Below are positions 13,916 through 63,741 of a DNA stretch of 64,000 bases, one piece after another. The stretch comes from Octopus bimaculoides. Lineage: Eukaryota. The stretch lies in assembly GCF_001194135.2 (NCBI RefSeq), contig NC_068985.1, positions 109,345,925 to 109,409,924 of the forward strand, written 5' to 3'. How positions within the stretch are numbered: position 1 is the stretch's first letter; every line of letters begins with the position of its first letter. Under the pieces are notes generated by a model. The model was not told the origin of the DNA. It saw only the letters and a list, made by a program, of their open reading frames with translations, and made no database searches. The position numbers and the translations under genes were made by a program.

Positions 13916-13924
13916 TATAATTTA

Positions 13925-14323
13925 CTATTTTACTCTTTTACTTGTTTCAGTCATTTGACTGTGGCCATGCTGGAGCACCGCCTTTAGTCGAGCAAATCGA
14001 CCCCATGACTTATTCTCTGGAAGCCTAGTACTTATTCTATCGCTCTCTTTGCCGAACCGCTAAGTAACGGAGACGTAAACACAACAGCATCGGTTGTCAA
14101 GCGATGTTGGGTGGACAAACACAGACACACACACACACATACATATATACGCAGATACCTATATAAGATGGGCTTCTTTCAGTTTCCGTCTGCCAACTCC
14201 ACTCACAAGGTTTTGGTCGGCCCGTGGCTATAGTTGAAGACACTTGCCCAAGGTGCCACGCAGTGGGAATGAACCCGGAACCATGTGGTTGGTAAGCAAG
14301 CTACTTACCACACAGCCACTCCT
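13925..14323 (-). mobile_element. tRNA-derived CORE-like SINE, family B (internal CA/TA microsatellite), full length
   Basis: Head AGTGGCTGTGTGGTAAG...GGTTCATTCCC, CORE-like CCTTGGGCAAGTGTCTT and tail GACTGAAACAAGTAAAAGAG; about 10 copies in the window. Confidence 0.85.
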
Positions 14324-14989: not shown

Positions 14990-15170
14990 GGCGTTGAGCT
15001 GGCAAAATCGTTAGCACCCCGAGCAAAATGAGTTCAAATTCCGCCGAGGTCGACTATGCCTTTCATCCTTTCAGAGTCGATAAATTATGTAGCAGTCAAG
15101 TGATGGGGTCGATGTAAGCGACTTAAACCGTCCTCCGAAATTGCTGACCTTCTGCCAAAATTGGAAGCCA
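14990..15170 (+). mobile_element. SINE family A copy flanked by (ATT)n and (TAG)n
   Basis: Head plus central domain. Confidence 0.8.
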
Positions 15171-15171
15171 T

Positions 15172-15251
<80 letters not shown>
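15172..15251. repeat. (TAG)n microsatellite
   Basis: Read directly from the sequence. Confidence 0.95.
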
Positions 15252-22850: not shown

Positions 22851-22959
22851 TTCCTCTCTCAGTTTATATGTGTGAGCATATTTCTCATTGTGGACAGAGA
22901 GTGTTGATATCACTCGTGTTAAATTAACAAATTGTAATAGCTCTCCCTCTCACTGCAGT

Positions 22960-23165
22960 GAGCGGGTAGAATCGTTAGCAGGCCAAGCAAAATGCTTAGC
23001 GACATTTCGTCCGTTTTTACATTCTGAGTTCAAATTTCGCCGAGGTTGATTTTACCTTTCATCTTCTCTGGATCGATAAAATAAATACCAGTTGATCACT
23101 GGGGTAAACGTAATTGAATTAGCCGCTCCATCGAAATTTCTGGCCTTGTGCCATAGTTTGAAACC
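22960..23165 (+). mobile_element. SINE family A copy
   Basis: Head, B-box GAGTTCAAATTTC and central domain. Confidence 0.8.
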
Positions 23166-23589
23166 AATATTTCTTCCTCTCCCCTATCCCATACACTTGT
23201 TTCGACACCATGGTAGAAATTAAATTTAGAACCGAAAAGCCTGAAAATATTCCGTTCTCACAATTTCTCTAATTCACCGACGTGGACAAGCAACGTTAAT
23301 TATTTTCCCCAGAATGGACGAAATTTGGGGTTGAGCTCACATGGTCTGGACTTGAAATTTGGAAGGAGAGAACTGGAGCAAATAATGCAAGGCATTGAAT
23401 TTTCCAATAGAATTTTATAAATACTTGTATCTTATAAATGCAACTGCAAATTGGTCACGATGCATTGTAGTCGCGTGCCAAGCACTTGCTTTCGGCAAGA
23501 AGGCAGAAATTAAACTTAGAACGCAAACCTAGGAAAGATAGTTTTAATAATTTCTTCAATTCACTAACCTTGTCTAGTAATAATAAATA

Positions 23590-23800
23590 TATGTTTGAAG
23601 GTTTGGCACAAGACTAGCAATATCGAGGCGGAGGGAAGGTAAATCGGTTGCACCGACACCAGTGCCCAACTGCTAATTATTTTATCCACTCCGAAAGGTT
23701 AAAAGACGAATTAGACCTCAGTGAAAATCGAACTCAGAACGGAAAGATGAACGAAATGATGCTAAGCATTTTGCCCGGCGTGCTAACGATTCTGCCAGAT
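23590..23800 (-). mobile_element. SINE family A copy
   Basis: Reverse complement of head and central domain. Confidence 0.75.
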
Positions 23801-23889
23801 CACTTCCTTTATAACAAAAGATATTGGTCATGAGAAATGAAGTTGAACTAGTATGGGTTTGAACTTGGGAACAGCGGGTTGGAATAAGT

Positions 23890-26457: not shown

Positions 26458-26566
26458 CGAAGAAGAAGAAGAAGAAGAAGAAGAAGAAGAAGAAGAAGAA
26501 GAAGAAGAAGAAGAAGAAGAAGAAGAAGAAGAAGAAGAAGAAGAAGAAGAAGAAGAAGAAGAAGAA
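26458..26566. repeat. (GAA)n microsatellite
   Basis: Read directly from the sequence. Confidence 0.95.
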
Positions 26567-26639: not shown

Positions 26640-27736
26640 GTTGTGGTTGTAATAGTAGTGATTGGAATTGTTCTGAATAAAGTCATGTGAAGTGACTGTT
26701 TTGAATATATCGTTATTAATATTTGCGTGGGTGTTATTCTAAGGCCTTGGTGATAGTGTCATTTGTGGTAGATGCATTCAAAAGGGGTTCATATTTTGTA
26801 ATAAAGAATGAGTTTTTACTAATGTGCTCACTACACGTTGTATCGTCCCTGAATTGATAGAGGGGGAAAATTCTGAAGGCTGATTGTTTGTTATTAGTGC
26901 AAATATCGATGTGTTCGCTGAATGCTATTTCTATGTTTTTCGGAACTTTGATCTGGGATCTGTGCAGAGCCATCCTTTGACGTAGACTACCTTTGGTTTG
27001 GCCTATGTATTGCTCTTCATACCCAGAGAAGGTTAATACATATATCAGGTTCTCCGAAGAACATGTGAAGTTGCGTTTCACTGTGAAACGTTGTCCCTGT
27101 TTGAAAGAGAACTCTGATCCCTCAATTATGTTGACGCATATACCACAGTTAGGTCTTCCGCAATCTTTTACTAATGTCTTCAGTTTTGTTGTTGAGCCTA
27201 TTCGGACTTGTGTTAGGAGAATGTTCATAGATTTGGGCTGTCTTTTGCTCTTTATGTTGGAGTGCGTTTGGAGGATTAAATTTATTCTGTGATCCCTATT
27301 TTAGTAGGGGAATTCTTTGGAGGATGGTGTTGAATGCTTCATTGCTAAGAGGGTTGTGTGAGGAGATGTATGGTAGAGCTTTTGGTTCTAAATTCTTTCA
27401 TTTGGGATGTCTGAGTTCGTGGATGTTGGGTTGTGGGGCACATTGAAAGCATATATCAATTAGTGATGGTGGGTAGTTCTTGTTGATGAGTTATCATTTA
27501 GTTCATGTAGTCGTGTGTCCCTGGTGCTTGTATTAGAAACTATAGCATAAATCCTTTTTGTTAGGTTGAAAGGGATATTCAGTGTGTCTGGAGTGGAATG
27601 AGTTGAACGGTAGATATTGCTTGGTGTCCGTGGGCTTATAGTATATATCTGTTTGTATTTTGCTGTTAGATCTCTTAATGAGGATGCCGAGCAAAGGAAG
27701 TGATGGCTATATTCCAATGTTTTAGCATTTTCCACC
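26640..27736 (-). mobile_element. Penelope-like retroelement (Neptune-type), RT C-terminus plus GIY-YIG endonuclease, 5' end lost at a gap
   Basis: NIPFNLTKRIYAIVSN...RLHEL (RT C-terminal region), CGRPNCGIC Cys cluster, FTCSSENLIYVL..YIGQT..SLRQRMALHRSQI (GIY-YIG), ending YEPLLN. Confidence 0.9.
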
Positions 27737-27783: not shown

Positions 27784-28116
27784 NNNNNNNNNNNNNNNNN
27801 NNNNNNNNNNNNNNNNNNNNNNNNNNNNNNNNNNNNNNNNNNNNNNNNNNNNNNNNNNNNNNNNNNNNNNNNNNNNNNNNNNNNNNNNNNNNNNNNNNNN
27901 NNNNNNNNNNNNNNNNNNNNNNNNNNNNNNNNNNNNNNNNNNNNNNNNNNNNNNNNNNNNNNNNNNNNNNNNNNNNNNNNNNNNNNNNNNNNNNNNNNNN
28001 NNNNNNNNNNNNNNNNNNNNNNNNNNNNNNNNNNNNNNNNNNNNNNNNNNNNNNNNNNNNNNNNNNNNNNNNNNNNNNNNNNNNNNNNNNNNNNNNNNNN
28101 NNNNNNNNNNNNNNNN

Positions 28117-28712: not shown

Positions 28713-28881
28713 TGTGTGTGTAGATATATGTATATATGTATTTATGTATATATATATAAATATCTATATATATATGTATATATATGTGTGTATGTACGTA
28801 TGTATGTATGTATAGATAGATAGATATATATAGAAATAGATAGACAGATAGATAGATAGATAACAGGTAGCTAAAAAGATT

Positions 28882-30139
28882 TTAGGTTGAGTGAAAAGTA
28901 AGTATTGTTTTGAACCATGAAGAATTTGTACCGGGTTTTTGCAGAATTGTCTGACAATACAGACATAGATTTGCCCAAATACAACAATAAATTAACATTG
29001 ATATTCGTTTCATCTTTGTTACAGTCATCTGAAATGGAGCTGTCAAGGCGCGATATTCGAGTAATTTTGCTATTCAACTTCAAAAAAGTACGTAATTCAG
29101 CTGAAACTGCTTGCGATATCAACGAAACGTTTGATGAGAAAATGAACGGTGAGAATTTAGCTCGAAAATGGTTTAAACGATTTTGCAGTGGAGACCCGAG
29201 CCTCGAAAATCGTGAGCGTAGTGGACGCCCATCTGTCACCGACGACGGCCAATTACAGACCGTCATTGAGAAAGATTCACGTAAACTCACTCGAGAAAAC
29301 TGGCAAAACAACTTCAAGTTCGGCAGAAAAATTCCCTCAACCATTTGCATGAGATCGGAAAATCAAAAGTGCGTGGCAAATGGGTACCACACAAAGTGAA
29401 TGAAAATCAGAAAATGTGCAGATATGAAATTTGCTCGTCGCTTCCTCTCCGAAACGAGACCGATCCATTTCTCGACCGGATTGTAACTTGCGATGAAAAG
29501 TGGATTCTTTACAATAATAAAAAACGCACTTCGCAGTGATTGGACCAAAATAAAGCACTGAAAACCTTCCCTAAACTCGAGCTCTTCAAAAAGATGGTTA
29601 TGGTGACTGTTTGGTGGTGTACTGCTGGATTCATCAACTATAACTTCATAAAAGCCGGAAAATCCATTACTGCAGAAACATATTACCATGAAGCTGCCAA
29701 AATTAACGAAAAACTGCTATTTTGCTGTCTCAGACTGGTCAACAGAAGGGAGCCAATCATTCTTCATGACAATGCTCGACCAAACGTTTCACTAATGACG
29801 CAGCAGTTGTTGAGGGAACTTGGTTACGAAGTTCTTCCCCACCCAGCTTATTACCCAGATCTTTCTCCTACCGACTACCACCTTTTCAAGCACCTTGATG
29901 ACTTCCTGCGATAGAAAGAGTTCAAAAATCAAACCGATGCTGAAAATGCGTTGAAAGAGTTCATCAACTCTAGAACTCTAGACTTTTATGTTATCGGAAT
30001 AAACAAACTTGTAACTCGTTGAGAAAAAATGTGTTGATTGTAATGGTACTTACTTTGATGAATAAACTTGCCGCGTTATTGAAATATATTGAGATGAAAT
30101 CCATGTTTCAAAACGTTGCTTACTATTTACGCAGCCTGA
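28882..30139 (+). mobile_element. Full-length decayed mariner (DD34D, Hsmar1/SETMAR-like); transposase relic 29034-30065
   Basis: TIR-like ends TTAGGTTGAGTGAAAAGTAAG and rc TCAGGCTGCGTAAATAGTAAG. Motifs WFKRF, RSGRP, WVPH, TCDEKW, HDNARP and HPAYYPDLSPTDYHLF are present; frameshift near 29300 and internal stops. Confidence 0.92.
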
Positions 30140-30142
30140 AAA

Positions 30143-30886: not shown

Positions 30887-31513
30887 TATCATACATAGAC
30901 ATAAACCTGAATATTTGTTTATAAATACCCACGCACACACACAAATATATATATATTTAGAGAGATGAAAATATATCTATATATACATAGAGACATGTGG
31001 GTGTGTGTATGTATGTATGTATGTATGTATGTACGAGATGTGATCCGAAAAGATCTTTGTACACGCTGTTGGTAAGAATGTACACTGCGTGTATATGTGA
31101 CATAAAGCAGATGAACAACTCGATCAACAAAATTTATTAATCAACGTACGTTATGCATTTTCTCCCATATCGAATTAGATGGAGATCTCGATAAGATCAC
31201 TACAGCAATATAACACTGTTTAGCAAACGATGATTGCTAATTATGCGATTATAAATTGACAGGTATATAAGCATTGAAAAGTTAAATCCGTACTACACAG
31301 GTTTGCAAGCCAATCTGAAATTGTCTTACGTAACTGAAAGATATATATTCTTGGGTCCGATTGCTTACACTTGGTAGTTAATGTTGCAAGGAGACGAGTG
31401 AAAATTTTAATAATTTCGGTTTCGTGCCACAGTGGAATGGAAGGAGGAAGCAAAGCTAGCTCAAGTGACCAATGAAAATCATATGTAGATATGTAGATAT
31501 ATTTTGGGTTTAC

Positions 31514-31564
<51 letters not shown>

Positions 31565-31566
31565 TA

Positions 31567-31750
31567 TATCTGTAAAAATATGTAACACTTATTCAGTAGC
31601 CATGATAAAACTCCGAGTTTCGGATGCCAGGGTGGGAGCCCACGCCAACATCTCTTCAGTTATCCGGACAATTGGCATCCGAAACCCTGGCATCCGAAAC
31701 TCGGAGTTTTATCATGGCTGCTGAATAAGTGTCACATATTTTTACAGATA
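31567..31750. mobile_element. 184-bp foldback element: 67-bp arms (65/67 identical) around a 50-nt core
   Basis: 31567-31633 is the reverse complement of 31684-31750 with two mismatches. Confidence 0.95.
31604..31664 (-). ncRNA. Type-I hammerhead ribozyme with intact catalytic core
   Basis: GAUAA-CUGAAGA-[GAUGUUGG..GUGG GCUC CCAC..CUGGCAUC C]-GAAA-CUCGGAG-UU-UUAUC. Stem I is 5 bp, stem II is long, stem III is ACU/AGU, and the GUU triplet predicts cleavage between 31609 and 31608. Confidence 0.8.
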
Positions 31751-32177
31751 AATTCCTCTATTTGCATATTATCGAGATCTCTTACTTTCTTTTGTTGTCC
31801 TTCCTGTGAAATATATANNNNNNNNNNNNNNNNNNNNNNNNNNNNNNNNNNNNNNNNNNNNNNNNNNNNNNNNNNNNNNNNNNNNNNNNNNNNNNNNNNN
31901 NNNNNNNNNNNNNNNNNNNNNNNNNNNNNNNNNNNNNNNNNNNNNNNNNNNNNNNNNNNNNNNNNNNNNNNNNNNNNNNNNNNNNNNNNNNNNNNNNNNN
32001 NNNNNNNNNNNNNNNNNNNNNNNNNNNNNNNNNNNNNNNNNNNNNNNNNNNNNNNNNNNNNNNNNNNNNNNNAGAGATTTGTTCCGAGTTTTTTTTTTCT
32101 TTTGCAGGTTATTTCGCATGCTTTCAACGAAAGTGACATCCAAATCACGTGTAAACTGTTCCTCTCTCCAGAAAAGG

Positions 32178-32296: not shown

Positions 32297-32509
32297 GAAC
32301 GTGAGATATGTTGAGTGCACTCGACAAAACCTATGGAAAGAAATTATTTCAGAACGAGGTTACGAACGGGTCTTTAACAAAATATTTATAAAATATGCCA
32401 AAAAAGATTTTTGTAATAGTATTCACTTCAAAATAATTAAAAAACAAAAAATATTGTTTGTTTAAAGAAAGCTAGAATATAAATACTTACTCTACAGACA
32501 ACTTACTTA

Positions 32510-32768
32510 TTCCATAGGTCTCTTTGCCGAACCGCTAAGTTACGGGTACGTAAACACACCAACGTCAATTGTCGTGCGACAAACACAGACTCACACATAT
32601 ATGTACGACGGGTTTCTTTCGGTTTCCGTCTACCAAATCCACTTACAAGGATTTCGTCGACCCGAAGCTATAGTAAAAAACACTTGGCCAAGGTGCCACG
32701 TAGTGTGACTGAACCCGGAATGATGGATTTGGGAAGCAAGCTTCTTACCACAGAGCCACTCCTGCGCC
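32510..32768 (-). mobile_element. SINE family B copy
   Basis: Head and CORE-like domain on the reverse strand. Confidence 0.8.
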
Positions 32769-33333: not shown

Positions 33334-33434
33334 GTATAGGTTAAATAATATGAGATAACAAAGCCAAGGCATTGTAGAATTTCTTGGACAATTTATAAAG
33401 AGAACGGTAGTCTTACACCTGTTTAATGGATATA
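33334..33434 (-). repeat. Inverted partial copy of the hammerhead-tail element at 34202-34302
   Basis: The 101 nt align ungapped to the reverse complement of 34202-34302 (about 84% by eye). Confidence 0.9.
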
Positions 33435-33435
33435 C

Positions 33436-33684
33436 TCTTTTACTAGATTCAGTCATTTGACTGTGGCCATGCTAGAGCACCGCCTTTAGTGCAGCGCATC
33501 GACTCCAGGACTTATTCTTTGTAAGCCTAGTACTTATTATAACGGTCTCTTTGGCCGAACCGCTAGGTTACAGGGATCTAAACACAACAGCATCGGCTGT
33601 CAAGCGATGTCGGGGGGACAACACACACACACAAACACACACACAAACACACACACACACACACACACATACACACACACACAT

Positions 33685-34178: not shown

Positions 34179-34226
34179 GTTTCTGATGATGAAATATCTT
34201 TTATATCACTGAAACAACTGTAAGAC
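34179..34226 (+). ncRNA. Minimal type-I hammerhead ribozyme motif (core intact, stems II and III decayed)
   Basis: GUUU-CUGAUGA-[UGAAAUA..UAUAUCA CU]-GAAA-CAACUG-UA-AGAC: stem I GUUU/AGAC, GUA triplet. Confidence 0.65.
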
Positions 34227-37994: not shown

Positions 37995-38730
37995 GGCAAC
38001 GAGATGGTAGAACACCGGTTAAANNNNNNNNNNTGCTTATCGCATTTCCTCCAACTTCACGCTCTGAGTTCAAATTCCACCGAGGGCAACTTTGCATTTC
38101 ATCCTTTCGAGGTGAATAAAATAAGTACCAACGGAGTACTGTAGTCAATGTACTCGAATTACCCTCTCTCCTGGATTATTTTGGTACTAGAAGGCGATGA
38201 GCACAAATTTTACCGTGGTCGACTTTGTCTTTCATACCCTTTTTGGGTTCGATGGAATAAGTACCAGTTGGGCACTGGCGAGAATGTAATTGATTAGCAA
38301 TCTCCTCAAAAATTTCAGACATTTTTGATGAAAATTCTTAGCAGCAGTTATTCTGGCTGTTCAAATGCCGTCTAGGTAGAGTTTGCCTGTCATCAATTGA
38401 GAGTAGATAAAAAAATACCAATTGAGCATGGGTGACGATGTAATCGATTAATCTTGAACCATAAGATTGATTGCCTTGTGCTAAAAATTAGAAAGAATTA
38501 TTATCATTAAAGCGACGAGCTGGTAGAATCTTTTTTAGCACACCGGACAGAATTCTTAGCAGAATTTCGTCAGGCTTTACATTTTGAGATTAATCTCTAC
38601 CTAGGTCAGCTTGGCCTTTCCTCCTTTCGGAATCAATAAAATAAGTTCCAGTTGCGTACTGGTGTCGATGTAACTAACTACCCTGTCCCCGAAATGTTAG
38701 ACCTCTTGACAATGATACAAACGCTTATTT
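37995..38730 (+). mobile_element. Four head-to-tail SINE family A copies
   Basis: Central-domain/ATAAGTACC motifs recur at about 38090, 38215, 38380 and 38600. Confidence 0.7.
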
Positions 38731-46574: not shown

Positions 46575-47100
46575 GGTGATAGGCTGGCTGCATCGTTAGT
46601 ACGCTGGGCGAAATGTCTACGGTATTTCGTCAATTATTATTATTATTATTGTTCAGTAGTTTTATTTTTATAACGTGCGTTCACTTCACTACCGAGCGCA
46701 GCTCTGTGTGCCTTGGGTATGTGCTGTGGTTTGCTGTGGTGCTCTTATGTTTACTGTATTGAAAGTGTTTTGCGTAGAATGTGTGCAGTACCCAGTAGTG
46801 CAATTTTCTGTATGTTATATATATTTGTAAGTCCTGGTGTTTTTGTTATGTATTTGTCTGAATATTTTTTTATTATACCTAAGGTACCTTCTATGATAGG
46901 AATTGTTTCTGTTTATCTTTATTATTATTATGTTTAGCGGTATTTCCTTTGCCGCTACGATATGAGATGAAACTCCGCCTAGGTCCCCTTTAATCCTTTC
47001 GAGATCGATTAAATAAATACAAGTTACGTATTGGCGTCGATGTAATCAACTTAATCCCTTATTCCAAATTTCAGGCTTTGTGCCTATAATAGAAAGGATT
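46575..47100 (+). mobile_element. SINE family A copy split by an insertion at ~46630-46930
   Basis: The head ends at CGGTATTTCGTC (46620-46631) and the body resumes at TTAGCGGTATTTCC (46934-46947). Confidence 0.7.
46640..46915 (-). mobile_element. 3' end of an R4/Dong-like non-LTR retrotransposon with (AAT)n tail
   Basis: TIPIIEGTLGIIKK...IQKIALLGTAHILRKTLSIQ*. Confidence 0.8.
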
Positions 47101-47129
47101 ATTATTTTTCCTTCGTTACACAGTGTAGG

Positions 47130-50623: not shown

Positions 50624-50679
50624 ATGTATGTATGCATATATGTATGTATGTATGTATGTATGAGTGTTATTCTTGTACT

Positions 50680-51070
50680 CTTTAATTCTTTTACTTGTTT
50701 CAGTCATTTGAATGCGGCCATGCTGGAGCACCGCTTTAGTCGAACAAATGGACCCCAGGAATTATTATTTGTAAACCTAGTACTTATTCTATCGTTCTCT
50801 TTTGTCGAACCATTATTTTACGGGGATGTAAACACATCGGTTGTGAAGCGATGTTGGGGGGACAAACACAGACACACAAACATACATACATATATATATA
50901 CGTATATCCGACGAGCTTCTTTCAGTATCCGTCCACCAAATACATTCACAAGGCTTTGGTCGGCCCGAGGCTATAGTAGAAGACACTTGCCCAAGGTGCC
51001 ACGCAGTGGGACTGAATCCGGAACCATGTGGTTGGGAAGCAAGCCATTTACCACACAGCCACTCCTGCGC
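50680..51070 (-). mobile_element. SINE family B, full length
   Basis: Complete head, CORE-like domain and tail. Confidence 0.88.
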
Positions 51071-55400: not shown

Positions 55401-55870
<470 letters not shown>

Positions 55871-56725
55871 TACAGGTTAATGACTGAAAAAAATATATAT
55901 AAAAGGAAAAGATTAATTCGTCTGCTGTGAAGATACGAAGATTCTGAAGTTTGAAGTAATCCCCTATTCTGAAGTCTTAAGATACGCTTTCAAAGTACCG
56001 TAAAGGAAGTTCAGTTTCATTTCATCATAACGTTCTACCTCTCTCTACACTGTTTTCGAAGTAAGGCTTAATTCAACTTACCAGCACCCACCTCTCACCG
56101 TTGCGTATAAAATTATATATTGGATTAATCGCATATAAACAGTTTGACGCTTAAATGCTAAATGTATATTAGAGAACGAAGCTTTTTTGGAAATTCCCCT
56201 TGAGGGTTACAGTCGATAAGTAATATGCGACGATAACTAGATTAAATATATATATTTTTTCCATAGAAATATAAATCATGTTACGTAATATGTATTTATA
56301 TTTCCAACATTATAGAAAATTTTCTTTCTGCTCCTGTATGTATTTGCATGTGTATGTTTGTTTGCAAGTATATACGCACCTGTGTGTCTGTGTGTATGTG
56401 TGTACGTGAATGCGTTTTTGTATGTTTTCTGATCCTAGCAGCTATACATGAAATTGCATGCACCACAGTGAGATATCCTTTTTTTTGTTTTTGCTTTTCT
56501 GAAGCATAGCTTTTATTCAGACATATTGTGTTGATTCCGAAAACAGCATTCTGACTGCCTGAGAAAAATTATATCGCTTGTATGTCTCATTTTGATCCAC
56601 CGAAGATCTCTCCTGGCGAACACACATCCCTTATATAACGGAAACTGCAATAAACACAACAACACTGATCTTCCACTTCAACGCCCAATAACAAATTCTT
56701 CTCCTATCACCCCTCCCTTAAAATA

Positions 56726-56860
56726 TTGGTTTCAAATTTTGGCACAAGGCCAGTAGTTTCGGGGCTTGGGGTAAGTCGAATATATCTACCCCAGTACTCA
56801 ACTAGTATTTATTTCATCGACCTCGAATGGTTGAAAGGTAAAGTCGACCTGGGCGGAAAC
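56726..56860 (-). mobile_element. SINE family A, 3' portion
   Basis: AAAGGTAAAGTCGACCT.GGCGGAA on the plus strand. Confidence 0.75.
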
Positions 56861-57825: not shown

Positions 57826-58270
57826 AATTTTACATCTGCTACTTATTTTACATCTGGTGTCTTTTGCCGAACTGTTAAGTTACAGGGACATAAAAAAAGC
57901 GTGACCGGTTATCAGGTGTTGGAAGAGGGAAAAACGCAAACACAAACACGTACACACACAAATACACACATGCAGAAACATACACACACAAACACACACA
58001 CTCATATACACTCACTCACAAACACACATACACAAAGACACACACACACACACACATACACGCTCACTCACAAACACACAAAAACCCACGAAGATATACA
58101 TGGACGACGGGCTTCCACAATTTCTGCCTATCAAATACAGTCGTAAAGCATTGGTTGGCCTGAGACAATAGTAGAAGATACTTGCCCAATTTTCCGCCTG
58201 GTGAGACAAAACCCAAAACCTCGATGTAGGAAAGCGAGCTTTTTAACCACAAACACCCGTCTCTGCGCCT
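57655..58270 (-). mobile_element. SINE family B (diverged, microsatellite-expanded)
   Basis: Tail, CCGAAC.G.TAAGTTAC and head motifs occur in order. Confidence 0.7.
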
Positions 58271-63044: not shown

Positions 63045-63180
63045 CTTTGCCTTTCATCCTTTCGGGGTCGATAAATTAAGTACCAGTTACCCATTGAGGT
63101 CGGCATAATCGACTTAATCATTTTGTCTGTCCTTGTGTGTCCCATCTGTGTGTAGCCCCTTGTGAGCAGTAAAGAAATAA
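63045..63180 (+). mobile_element. SINE family A, 3' portion (tail variant shared with 1222-1448)
   Basis: CTTTGCCTTTCATCCTTTCGGGGTCG...TGTCCTTGT.TGTCC...AGTAAAGAAATA. Confidence 0.85.
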
Positions 63181-63741
63181 GAAACATTTCGATTTTTTTT
63201 TGTTTAACTATTGGCAATTAATTTATAGCAGTTCTTATAACTTCAATAAATTTGAGCTAAATATATTTAAATCAAACTGAAATTCTGAACATATCATATA
63301 CCTTAAATTAACCCTGCAACAGAATGACATTCCGTTCAGAAGATTTGGTGTGACCATGGAAACCTGATAACCGGCCCTATGGGTTTCGGATCTTGGAACA
63401 ATATTATCCAAGGGGGTTTCCTTACTTATAAATACCATTGATTATGTCTGTCTTTTATAATTCATGTCTGTTTATCAAAAGGAAGCAACATTATGCCTAT
63501 ATGAAGGTGTGGCATGCAGCTTGACACACGGGTTTACAGTGATGAGCATAATCACGTGATAATATACACTCATATAAACACGCACCGAGAAATTCTCATG
63601 TATATATATATTATACAAATAAATTCACACTCATCTGTAAATACAATCATATGTGTGGGTGCGTGCGCGTATGTGCACTTCGTTTTTGTATTTGGTTTGC
63701 TAGATTCTTTAAGTGAGTTCGTGTGTTGAAGCATATTTTGT

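What the first reader, a model, noticed from the sequence alone, without database searches (positions are those of the whole stretch)
31567..31750. Young 184-bp foldback element carrying an intact hammerhead ribozyme
The minus strand of 31664-31604 has every conserved hammerhead nucleotide (CUGAAGA, GAAA, GUU). Stem I is 5 bp, stem II is a long two-part hairpin with one bulged C, and stem III is near-palindromic. The ribozyme's 3' half plus 37 nt of tail is repeated in inverted orientation (65/67 identity), preceded by an extra TGGCATCCGAAA. Inverted partial terminal copies are a known Penelope insertion signature. A full transcript would fold into a 67-bp hairpin that sequesters the ribozyme, a possible conformational on/off switch (inference). 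The low arm divergence suggests a recent event.
Basis: partly seen in the sequence, partly recalled or inferred. Interest (0 to 1): 0.9.

Follow-up and report, generated by a model that had tools for sequence, protein, structure and literature searches.

The report
Truncated Penelope hammerhead with inverted twin
A 184-bp hairpin-shaped repeat carrying a hammerhead-ribozyme motif is most likely the dead stub of a Penelope-like retrotransposon insertion together with its usual inverted partial twin: real, but an already described and ordinary kind of feature in animal genomes.

Summary
Arms 31567-31633 and 31684-31750 are 65/67 complementary. The minus strand of 31664-31604 carries every hammerhead core nucleotide, with a 5-bp helix I, a long helix II and an odd-palindromic helix III. 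A generic hammerhead descriptor finds only this site in the window (0.02 expected by chance). Rfam Hammerhead_1 aligns it over the full model but scores 13 bits against a threshold of 34. The anatomy matches published Penelope-like element (PLE) insertions. The ribozyme lies about 40 nt from the 3' boundary. The copy is extremely 5'-truncated (117 nt). A second, inverted 5'-truncated copy (67 nt) ends at the same 3' terminus. The element abuts a (TA)27 tract. The PLE protein is reported to nick and extend both DNA strands from one internal RT start site, which explains the head-to-head geometry. A decayed PLE ORF lies 4.4 kb away, so such elements live in this genome. I found no other copy in the window or in any searchable collection. 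Covariation, variable truncation points and a MITE alternative therefore remain untested. The "on/off switch" idea has no support: the hairpin looks like an insertion by-product. A single PLE-type hammerhead needs a partner to cleave. New member of a known kind; low interest.

The parts
31567..31750 (.). Whole 184-bp foldback: a long copy (31683-31567, minus sense) plus an inverted short copy (31684-31750, plus sense)
31604..31664 (-). Type-I hammerhead motif, 61 nt: helix I, CUGAAGA, helix II, GAAA, palindromic helix III, GUU, helix I
31653..31659 (-). Core box CUGAAGA (C3-A9)
31622..31652 (-). Helix II: 8 bp, a C.C mismatch, 4 bp and a GCUC loop, with one extra unpaired C next to G12
31610..31621 (-). 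GAAA box (31621-31618) and the odd palindrome ACUCGGAGU (31618-31610), which can form helix III between two copies. The predicted cut is between 31609 and 31608.
31567..31603 (-). 37-nt 3' tail after the ribozyme, ending ...UUUUUACAG(AUA). This is the presumed 3' boundary, i.e. the RT start site. The last 3 nt could instead be target-derived.
   Evidence: PMC11167929 for the concept
31684..31750 (+). Inverted 5'-truncated copy: the last 30 nt of the hammerhead plus the 37-nt tail. It lacks the CUGANGA box, so it is not a ribozyme.
31665..31683 (-). 19-nt leader upstream of helix I (UUCGGAUGCCAAUUGUCCG). With 31684-31685 it contains a second copy of the 13-mer, which is complementary to the 3' strand of helix II plus GAAA. 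It is either junction filler or native sequence.
   Evidence: note 2 as corrected in note 3
31515..31569 (.). (TA)27 microsatellite abutting the 3' boundary of the long copy: an AT-rich target

Best explanation
The foldback is a dead-on-arrival retrotransposition product. It was made by a Penelope-like element, or by a non-autonomous hammerhead-bearing RNA that a PLE mobilised.

Proposed sequence of events (inferred):
1. The PLE endonuclease cut both strands at the AT-rich edge of a (TA)n tract.
2. Both free 3' ends primed reverse transcription of the element's RNA from the same internal start site, about 40 nt downstream of the hammerhead cut site.
3. Both cDNAs aborted early, after 117 nt and 67 nt.
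4. They were joined head to head, perhaps through the 2-nt AC/GT overlap at 31684-31685.

This leaves two inverted 5'-truncated copies that share the same outer terminus. The hammerhead is the PLE-type variant whose helix III is only a palindrome. Such ribozymes need a second copy, and probably the element's protein, to cleave. At this locus there is one complete motif and one half motif on the opposite strand. There is no ORF, and a read-through transcript would fold into a 67-bp hairpin. The locus therefore most likely has no ribozyme function.

Shown: the sequence anatomy and its non-random nature. Inferred: the double-priming origin and the present-day inactivity.
For: Motif:
- The hammerhead core and helices are present and unlikely by chance.
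- Its features match the published PLE hammerheads: helix I of 4-5 bp, a long helix II, a possible G10.1-C11.1 pair and a palindromic helix III/loop 3 (PMC4209133).
- A dimer of the motif gains an intermolecular palindrome helix: -46.3 kcal/mol against 2 x -16.2.

Insertion architecture:
- Both arms end at exactly the same terminus and differ only in how far they extend 5'.
- The literature describes high 5' truncation, an inverted 5'-truncated copy adjacent at the 5' end, a (TA)n/microsatellite target bias and a hammerhead near the 3' end (PMC8557442).
- The purified PLE protein cleaves and extends both top and bottom strands, with the same internal RT start site on each, and prefers AT-rich DNA. 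Its insertion boundary lies about 55-90 nt downstream of the hammerhead cut site (PMC11167929). Here the distance is 38-41 nt.
- The element abuts (TA)27.

Genomic setting:
- PLEs exist in this genome. An RT C-terminus, a CX2CX2C linker and a GIY-YIG ORF lie at 26734-27735 on the minus strand.
- Cervera & de la Pena already reported pairs of such motifs 100-700 bp apart on opposite strands, and mostly solitary motifs taken to be truncated PLEs.
Against: - No RT/EN ORF is attached to this copy. The nearby PLE remnant has no hammerhead in its 3' flank and is not demonstrably the same family.
- No second copy could be found in the window or in any accessible collection. The diagnostic pattern of a shared 3' end with variable 5' ends is therefore untested.
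- The Rfam score is far below threshold.
- The usual unpaired base between A9 and G10.1 is absent. An unpaired C sits on the other strand instead.
- The duplicated 13-mer at the junction is not explained by the simplest joining models.
- A 2-bp TA duplication can be drawn around the element, as for a Tc1/mariner-type MITE.
Confidence: 0.72

Rival explanations
1. A miniature inverted-repeat DNA transposon (MITE). It would have 64-67-bp terminal inverted repeats and a TA target-site duplication, and would move by cut-and-paste. The hammerhead-like centre would be incidental.
For: It is 184 bp with long, near-identical terminal inverted repeats. If the ends are set at 31569/31748, the flanks read TA...TA. 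A Mos1-like mariner sits 1.4 kb away.
Against: The mariner's TIRs (TTAGGTTGAGTG...) are unrelated to the element's ends. A 2-bp TA match next to a (TA)n tract is close to uninformative. No 3-, 4- or 8-bp duplication fits. The 'TIR' is not separate from the interior: it is the 3' half of a hammerhead that the interior completes, which a MITE does not predict. A chance hammerhead has about 0.02 expectation per window.
Confidence: 0.12
2. A remnant of a non-LTR retrozyme. That is a tandem-repeat element whose hammerheads cut out a small circular RNA. Here it would be reduced to one monomer plus a rearranged piece.
For: It is a type-I hammerhead in an AT-rich non-coding repeat of about the right unit size. 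Solo monomers are reported, and retrozymes are proposed to be PLE derivatives mobilised by PLEs (PMC7229834; bioRxiv 10.64898/2026.07.22.740005).
Against: There is no direct or tandem repeat at the locus. The second copy is inverted, not head to tail. The hammerhead is the minimal PLE type rather than the canonical type with loop-loop contacts. If the source RNA was a retrozyme mobilised by a PLE, the insertion mechanism is still the one in the best explanation. This rival therefore differs only in which template RNA was copied.
Confidence: 0.08
3. A purpose-built ribozyme switch. The inverted arm would be a selected regulatory partner that sequesters the hammerhead until the hairpin is opened.
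For: The hairpin (-127.6 kcal/mol) would indeed outcompete the active fold (about -8 kcal/mol). A 13-nt leader complementary to helix II/core exists even without the inverted arm.
Against: No conservation data exist. The geometry is what a known insertion mechanism produces by accident. A 67-bp perfect duplex is effectively irreversible and is more likely a dsRNA/Dicer substrate than a switch. The monomer lacks a stable helix III in any case.
Confidence: 0.03
4. A chance hammerhead look-alike inside an unrelated hairpin (for example a miRNA-like or hairpin-RNA locus), or a palindromic short-read assembly artefact.
For: Rfam miRNA models hit the hairpin weakly (mir-3126 38.6 bits, mir-358 35.8 bits), while the hammerhead model scores only 13 bits. 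The scaffold is gap-ridden, with an N run 68 bp away.
Against: The miRNA hits are far below their thresholds (80 and 65 bits) and simply reflect any long hairpin. An artefactual palindrome would be perfect and symmetrical, whereas this one has 2 mismatches and an asymmetric 50-nt centre. The descriptor test argues against chance. The coincidence with four independent PLE hallmarks is hard to get by accident.
Confidence: 0.05

Closest known systems
Minimal/atypical type-I hammerheads of Penelope-like elements (Cervera & de la Pena 2014, PMC4209133)
   Same: All core nucleotides are present. Helix I is 5 bp. Helix II is longer than the canonical 4 bp. A G10.1-C11.1 pair is possible. Helix III is reduced to a small palindrome that can only form a real helix between two copies. 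The motif occurs as a solitary copy and as opposite-strand pairs.
   Different: Helix II is unusually long (8+4 bp with a C.C mismatch). The conserved unpaired base between A9 and G10.1 is missing, and an unpaired C lies on the 3' strand next to G12 instead. The cleavage triplet is GUU. No attached pLTR or ORF is seen.
PLE insertion architecture: 5'-truncated copy plus adjacent inverted 5'-truncated copy, 'tail', AT/microsatellite targets (Craig et al. 2021, PMC8557442; Frangieh et al. 2024, PMC11167929)
   Same: Two inverted copies share one 3' terminus. Truncation is extreme. A (TA)n tract sits at the boundary. The hammerhead lies a few tens of nt inside the 3' boundary.
   Different: Both copies are tiny (117 and 67 nt), so the product looks like a MITE. 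There is no partial tandem (pLTR). No one-sided 30-40-bp tail is discernible. A 13-nt duplication sits at the internal junction.
L1 twin priming (inverted, truncated LINE-1 insertions; cited from my own knowledge, Ostertag & Kazazian 2001)
   Same: It works alike. The second DNA strand also primes reverse transcription on the same RNA, giving an inversion joined with microhomology.
   Different: In L1 the second priming is internal on the RNA, so the two pieces are adjacent segments rather than duplicates. Here both pieces start at the same RNA position and are therefore duplicates. The enzyme family is also different (GIY-YIG/PLE RT).
Non-LTR retrozymes (Cervera & de la Pena 2020, PMC7229834)
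   Same: A type-I hammerhead in a short, AT-rich, non-coding repeat, probably PLE-related.
   Different: There is no tandem arrangement, the hammerhead is not canonical, and there is no evidence of circular RNA.
MITEs of the Tc1/mariner (Stowaway-like) kind
   Same: The size, the long terminal inverted repeats and a possible TA duplication.
   Different: The termini are unrelated to the local mariner. The arm is continuous with a ribozyme motif. There is no evidence of a family.

Membership tests
Hammerhead ribozyme, type I (Rfam RF00163) | Conserved core C3 U4 G5 A6 N7 G8 A9 / G12 A13 A14 / A15.1-U16.1 / H17 | tested here: met
   CUGAAGA, GAAA, and A...U followed by U17, read directly. All are aligned to the model consensus.
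Hammerhead ribozyme, type I (Rfam RF00163) | Three helices around the core, with helix I open | tested here: inconclusive
   Helix I is 5 bp and helix II is 8+4 bp. Helix III is only 2-3 bp with a loop of 3 nt or less as a monomer. A full helix III forms only between two copies.
Hammerhead ribozyme, type I (Rfam RF00163) | Score at or above the curated gathering threshold | tested here: not met
   13.1 bits against 34. No hit at gathering threshold over the whole window.
Hammerhead ribozyme, type I (Rfam RF00163) | Self-cleavage at H17 | not testable with these tools
   This needs in vitro transcription of monomer and dimer constructs.
Hammerhead ribozyme, type I (Rfam RF00163) | Helix covariation among homologues | not testable with these tools
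   No homologue was retrieved.
PLE-associated min-hammerhead (PMC4209133) | Short helix I (4-5 bp) and enlarged helix II (6-8 bp or more) | tested here: met
   5 bp and 8+4 bp.
PLE-associated min-hammerhead (PMC4209133) | Palindromic 15.2-16.2 / loop 3, giving a dimer-forming helix III | tested here: met
   ACUCGGAGU is an odd palindrome. Cofolding gives an intermolecular helix.
PLE-associated min-hammerhead (PMC4209133) | Unpaired nucleotide between A9 and G10.1 | tested here: not met
   G follows A9 directly and can pair with C. The unpaired base is a C on the 3' strand.
PLE-associated min-hammerhead (PMC4209133) | Located in the pLTR of an element encoding RT and a GIY-YIG endonuclease | tested here: inconclusive
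   There is no ORF at the locus. A decayed PLE ORF lies 4.4 kb away on the same strand, but it is separated by a mariner and has no detectable hammerhead.
PLE insertion (PMC8557442, PMC11167929) | Inverted 5'-truncated copy adjacent to the 5' end, with both copies sharing the element's 3' terminus | tested here: met
   Arms are 65/67 identical, have identical outer ends and differ in inner extent.
PLE insertion (PMC8557442, PMC11167929) | AT-rich / (TA)n target | tested here: met
   (TA)27 at 31515-31569 abuts the element. The other flank begins AAATT.
PLE insertion (PMC8557442, PMC11167929) | Copies across the genome share the 3' end and vary in 5' truncation, with some joined to the ORF | not testable with these tools
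   The source genome is not in any searchable collection.
MITE (TIR DNA transposon derivative) | Terminal inverted repeats | tested here: met
MITE (TIR DNA transposon derivative) | Target-site duplication of a fixed length | tested here: inconclusive
   Only a 2-bp TA or AT can be drawn, inside AT-rich sequence. No 3-, 4- or 8-bp duplication fits.
MITE (TIR DNA transposon derivative) | Termini shared with an autonomous transposon | tested here: not met
   The only transposase-bearing element in the window, a mariner at 28880-30141, has unrelated TIRs. Other partners are untestable.
Non-LTR retrozyme | At least two head-to-tail repeat units, each with a type-I hammerhead | tested here: not met
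   No direct-repeat family was found at 31300-32000, and no tandem array other than (TA)n.

The most novel reading that the evidence does not exclude
The 13-nt leader GUUUCGGAUGCCA, 8 nt upstream of helix I, may be native to the master element rather than junction filler. If so, this PLE family would carry a built-in 'ribozyme-off' alternative helix that pairs with the 3' strand of helix II and G12-A14. Alternatively, the 184-bp foldback itself may be a propagating, hairpin-shaped, hammerhead-bearing non-autonomous element. Either reading would mean a structurally regulated hammerhead in an animal retroelement.
Probability: 0.08. Interest if true: 0.5.

Novelty: new member of a known kind. Interest (0 to 1): 0.2.

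Why it matters
It matters little on its own. PLE-type hammerheads occur in the thousands per animal genome, and inverted truncated PLE copies are textbook for this class. The locus is a compact natural example of the outcome predicted by the 2024 in vitro finding that a PLE protein primes on both DNA strands from one RT start site. It shows that such events can produce MITE-like foldbacks that repeat annotators may misclassify. If transcribed, the 67-bp perfect hairpin could be a source of double-stranded RNA. The junction 13-mer is the only unexplained detail.

Tried and rejected
(1) Rfam at gathering threshold over the whole window gave nothing. Rfam with E<=10 on 421 nt gave only hairpin-driven miRNA look-alikes.

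(2) I looked for a second copy in the window with a 27-mer allowing 3 mismatches, blastn at word size 7, and nhmmer --max. Only the two arms came back. My first blastn run was swamped by the (TA)n flank.

(3) Exact and gapped DNA pattern scans of IMG/VR, JGI metagenomes and GTDB genomes gave 0 hits.

(4) I translated the element in five open frames and searched the 5.8-billion-protein set, hoping that spurious ORFs had been called over other copies. There were no hits.

(5) I used the neighbouring PLE endonuclease ORF to fetch comparison PLEs. This gave two short TARA contigs and one JGI contig (L001-L003). None has a hammerhead by descriptor or by Rfam, so they could not serve as comparators. 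IMG/VR held no PLE.

(6) Snap-back priming on the 13-nt self-complementarity, as the origin of the inverted arm, is rejected as stated. It predicts one copy of the 13-mer, and two are observed (note 2).

(7) A mariner-derived MITE is rejected for the local mariner because the TIRs are unrelated.

(8) An ORF starting at the AUG at the base of helix II, as in the Anolis PLE, is rejected. That frame closes after 20 codons in both arms.

(9) Identifying the host by searching the literature for repeat-sequence strings gave no hits.

(10) Supplementary sequence files of the two key PLE papers are not held.

Full report
**What the sequence shows.** The window is AT-rich (about 33% G+C), extremely rich in microsatellites and broken by 15 runs of N. 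It is a short-read scaffold of an animal genome. At 31567-31750 there is a 184-bp foldback. Arms 31567-31633 and 31684-31750 are 65/67 identical as reverse complements, with two transition differences, and are separated by 50 nt. A 27-mer from the arm occurs exactly twice in the window, once per arm, against 0.00 expected.

**The hammerhead.** The minus strand of 31664-31604 reads GAUAA-CUGAAGA-[helix II]-GAAA-C-UCGGA-G-UU-UUAUC.
- Every hammerhead core position is present.
- Helix I is 5 bp.
- Helix II is 8 bp, then a C.C mismatch, then 4 bp and a GCUC loop, with an extra unpaired C next to the core.
- Helix III is the odd palindrome ACUCGGAGU.
- The predicted cut is between 31609 and 31608.

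**Is it more than chance?** A generic type-I/minimal-hammerhead descriptor was run on both strands. It requires [CU]UGANGA, helix II of at least 4 bp with up to one unpaired base at either end, GAAA, a closed helix III, UH and helix I of at least 4 bp. It finds this site and no other. The mean is 0.02 hits per window in 200 first-order Markov simulations. At the observed stem lengths the count is 0 of 200. The bare core pattern has a second match at 34183, but it has no helices. Rfam is lukewarm. Nothing passes at gathering threshold. In a 75-nt search, Hammerhead_1 is the best family and aligns over the whole model, but scores only 13.1 bits against 34. The main reasons are that the 29-nt helix II is scored as an insertion and helix III has a 1-nt 'loop'. 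I take the motif as real but atypical. It cannot be called a member by Rfam's own criterion.

**What kind of hammerhead?** Cervera and de la Pena (PMC4209133) described the hammerheads of Penelope-like elements (PLEs). These have helix I of 4-5 bp and a helix II larger than usual. G10.1-C11.1 is conserved. Helix III is reduced to a palindrome, so the ribozyme can only work as a dimer, and in vitro activity is low. The motifs are mostly solitary and were interpreted as truncated PLEs. Some occur as pairs 100-700 bp apart on opposite strands. The present motif meets those features except one: the usual unpaired base between A9 and G10.1 is absent, and an unpaired C sits on the opposite strand. 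Cofolding two copies gives the expected intermolecular palindrome helix, at -46.3 kcal/mol against -16.2 per monomer.

**What kind of element?** The two arms share exactly the same outer end (...UUUUUACAG[AUA] in the ribozyme sense) and differ only in how far they reach inward. One reaches 117 nt, through the whole hammerhead and a 19-nt leader. The other stops after 67 nt, in the middle of helix II. That is the geometry of two 5'-truncated copies of one RNA placed head to head.
- Craig et al. (PMC8557442) list the structural hallmarks of PLE insertions. [quoted passage not shown]
- Frangieh et al. (PMC11167929) showed that a purified PLE protein nicks and extends both DNA strands. Reverse transcription starts at the same internal RNA site on both, and AT-rich DNA is preferred. 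The genomic insertion boundary lies some 55-90 nt downstream of the hammerhead cut site.
- Here the boundary is 38-41 nt downstream of the cut site, and the element abuts (TA)27.
- PLEs are present in this genome. A decayed ORF lies at 26734-27735 on the same strand. It has the RT C-terminus, a CX2CX2C linker and a GIY-YIG domain, and is 51-58% identical to two PLE proteins from TARA metagenomes.

I therefore read the foldback as an abortive double-primed PLE insertion, or a PLE-mobilised one. This is a known kind of object.

**How it works now.** Most likely it does not. There is no ORF. Only one complete hammerhead is present and it lacks a stable helix III. The second arm lacks the CUGANGA box and lies on the other strand. 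A transcript through the locus folds into a 67-bp duplex at -127.6 kcal/mol, whereas the active monomer fold is worth about -8 kcal/mol. If transcribed, the hairpin would more plausibly feed a dsRNA/siRNA pathway. This is inference and was not tested.

**Age.** Two differences in 67 nt give a Jukes-Cantor distance of 0.030 between arms that were identical at birth. That is young relative to the decayed PLE and mariner nearby. With only two events the estimate is very imprecise.

**The unexplained detail.** The 13-mer TGGCATCCGAAAC occurs twice in direct orientation at the junction, at 31673-31685 and 31688-31700 on the plus strand.
- It may be filler or slippage created when the two cDNAs were joined.
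- Or the master RNA may natively carry GUUUCGGAUGCCA 8 nt upstream of helix I. In that case the long copy alone folds with this leader paired to the 3' strand of helix II and the GAAA box. The two cDNAs would then have been joined through a 2-nt AC/GT overlap.

Simple snap-back priming predicts one copy of the 13-mer, not two. Only other copies of the family can decide.

**Rivals.**
- *MITE.* This is the serious alternative, given long TIRs, 184 bp and a possible TA duplication. However, the TA is uninformative beside (TA)n, and no longer duplication fits. The only transposase-bearing element nearby, a Mos1-like mariner at 28880-30141, has unrelated TIRs. A MITE also gives no reason for the arm to be the 3' half of a ribozyme completed by the interior.
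- *Non-LTR retrozyme remnant.* This fails the defining tandem arrangement. At most it would change which RNA was copied, not how.
- *Chance or assembly artefact.* These are unlikely for the reasons given above.

**Limits.** I could not retrieve a single homologue. The window has none. IMG/VR, JGI metagenomes, GTDB genomes and the protein collection gave nothing. The PLE contigs I did fetch carry no hammerhead. Covariation, family structure and the MITE-versus-PLE test therefore remain for whoever holds the genome.

**Host.** The two abundant SINE-like repeat families in the window look to me like those of octopus genomes. That is recollection, not a test, and a literature string search found nothing. 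If it is correct, recently active PLE families have been reported in Octopus vulgaris (PMC13282606).

**Verdict.** New member of a known kind; interest 0.2.

Noticed in passing
window 26734-27735 (minus strand): A decayed Penelope-like element ORF. It has RT C-terminal pieces (..DIYYKPTDTKQYLPFNSFHS..), a CGRPNCGIC linker and a GIY-YIG endonuclease, and is 51-58% identical to two TARA metagenome PLE proteins. It is cut upstream by an N gap (27784-28116). Its 3' flank runs into (TTC)36 at 26459-26566, with no hammerhead detectable.
   Followed up: partly
window 28880-30141 (plus strand): A Mos1-like mariner. It has HTH_48 and Transposase_1 domains in three frameshifted ORFs and roughly 40-nt TIRs (78% complementary) beginning TTAGGTTGAGTG. 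It is flanked on both sides by (ATAG)n.
   Followed up: partly
window 1218-1392, 2483-2683, 5568-6065, 15029-15173, 22951-23175, 23582-23805, 38034-38669, 46930-47109, 56721-56858, 63045-63186: An abundant SINE-like repeat family of about 150-220 bp, with copies 70-87% identical. It contains ...GTTCTGAGTTCAAATTCCGCCGAGGTCGACTTTGCCTTTCATCC.... From memory it resembles octopus SINEs. The host identity is not verified.
   Followed up: partly
window 13923-14323, 32504-32767, 33433-33645, 50676-51070, 55401-55755, 58105-58251: A second interspersed repeat family of about 400 bp with an internal (AC)n/(AT)n microsatellite. It begins ...TCAGTCATTTGACTGTGGCCATGCTGGAGCACCGCC.... Its copies often end in microsatellites, which may seed part of the window's microsatellite load.
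   Followed up: no
window, whole; N runs listed: Very high microsatellite density (133 TRF rows in 64 kb). Most of the 15 N gaps are bordered by microsatellites on both sides, so they look like unresolved repeat tracts. Locus structures near gaps, including the one 68 bp from the foldback, deserve long-read confirmation.
   Followed up: no
L001 about 1700-1745 and L002 783-825: Two TARA PLE contigs share a conserved 3'-UTR block, CCATGATTATC..ACAGAG..GTGAAACCGGT(C/T)GG. It contains GAAAC, a CCGG palindrome and UC (half of a hammerhead-like core) but has no CUGANGA box or helix I. L002 also resembles the foldback's GAAAC..CGGAGTTTT. Its meaning is unknown.
   Followed up: partly
window 7312-7577 vs 8083-8356: A 270-bp inverted repeat pair, 83% identical and about 500 bp apart. 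This is another foldback-like structure and was not examined.
   Followed up: no
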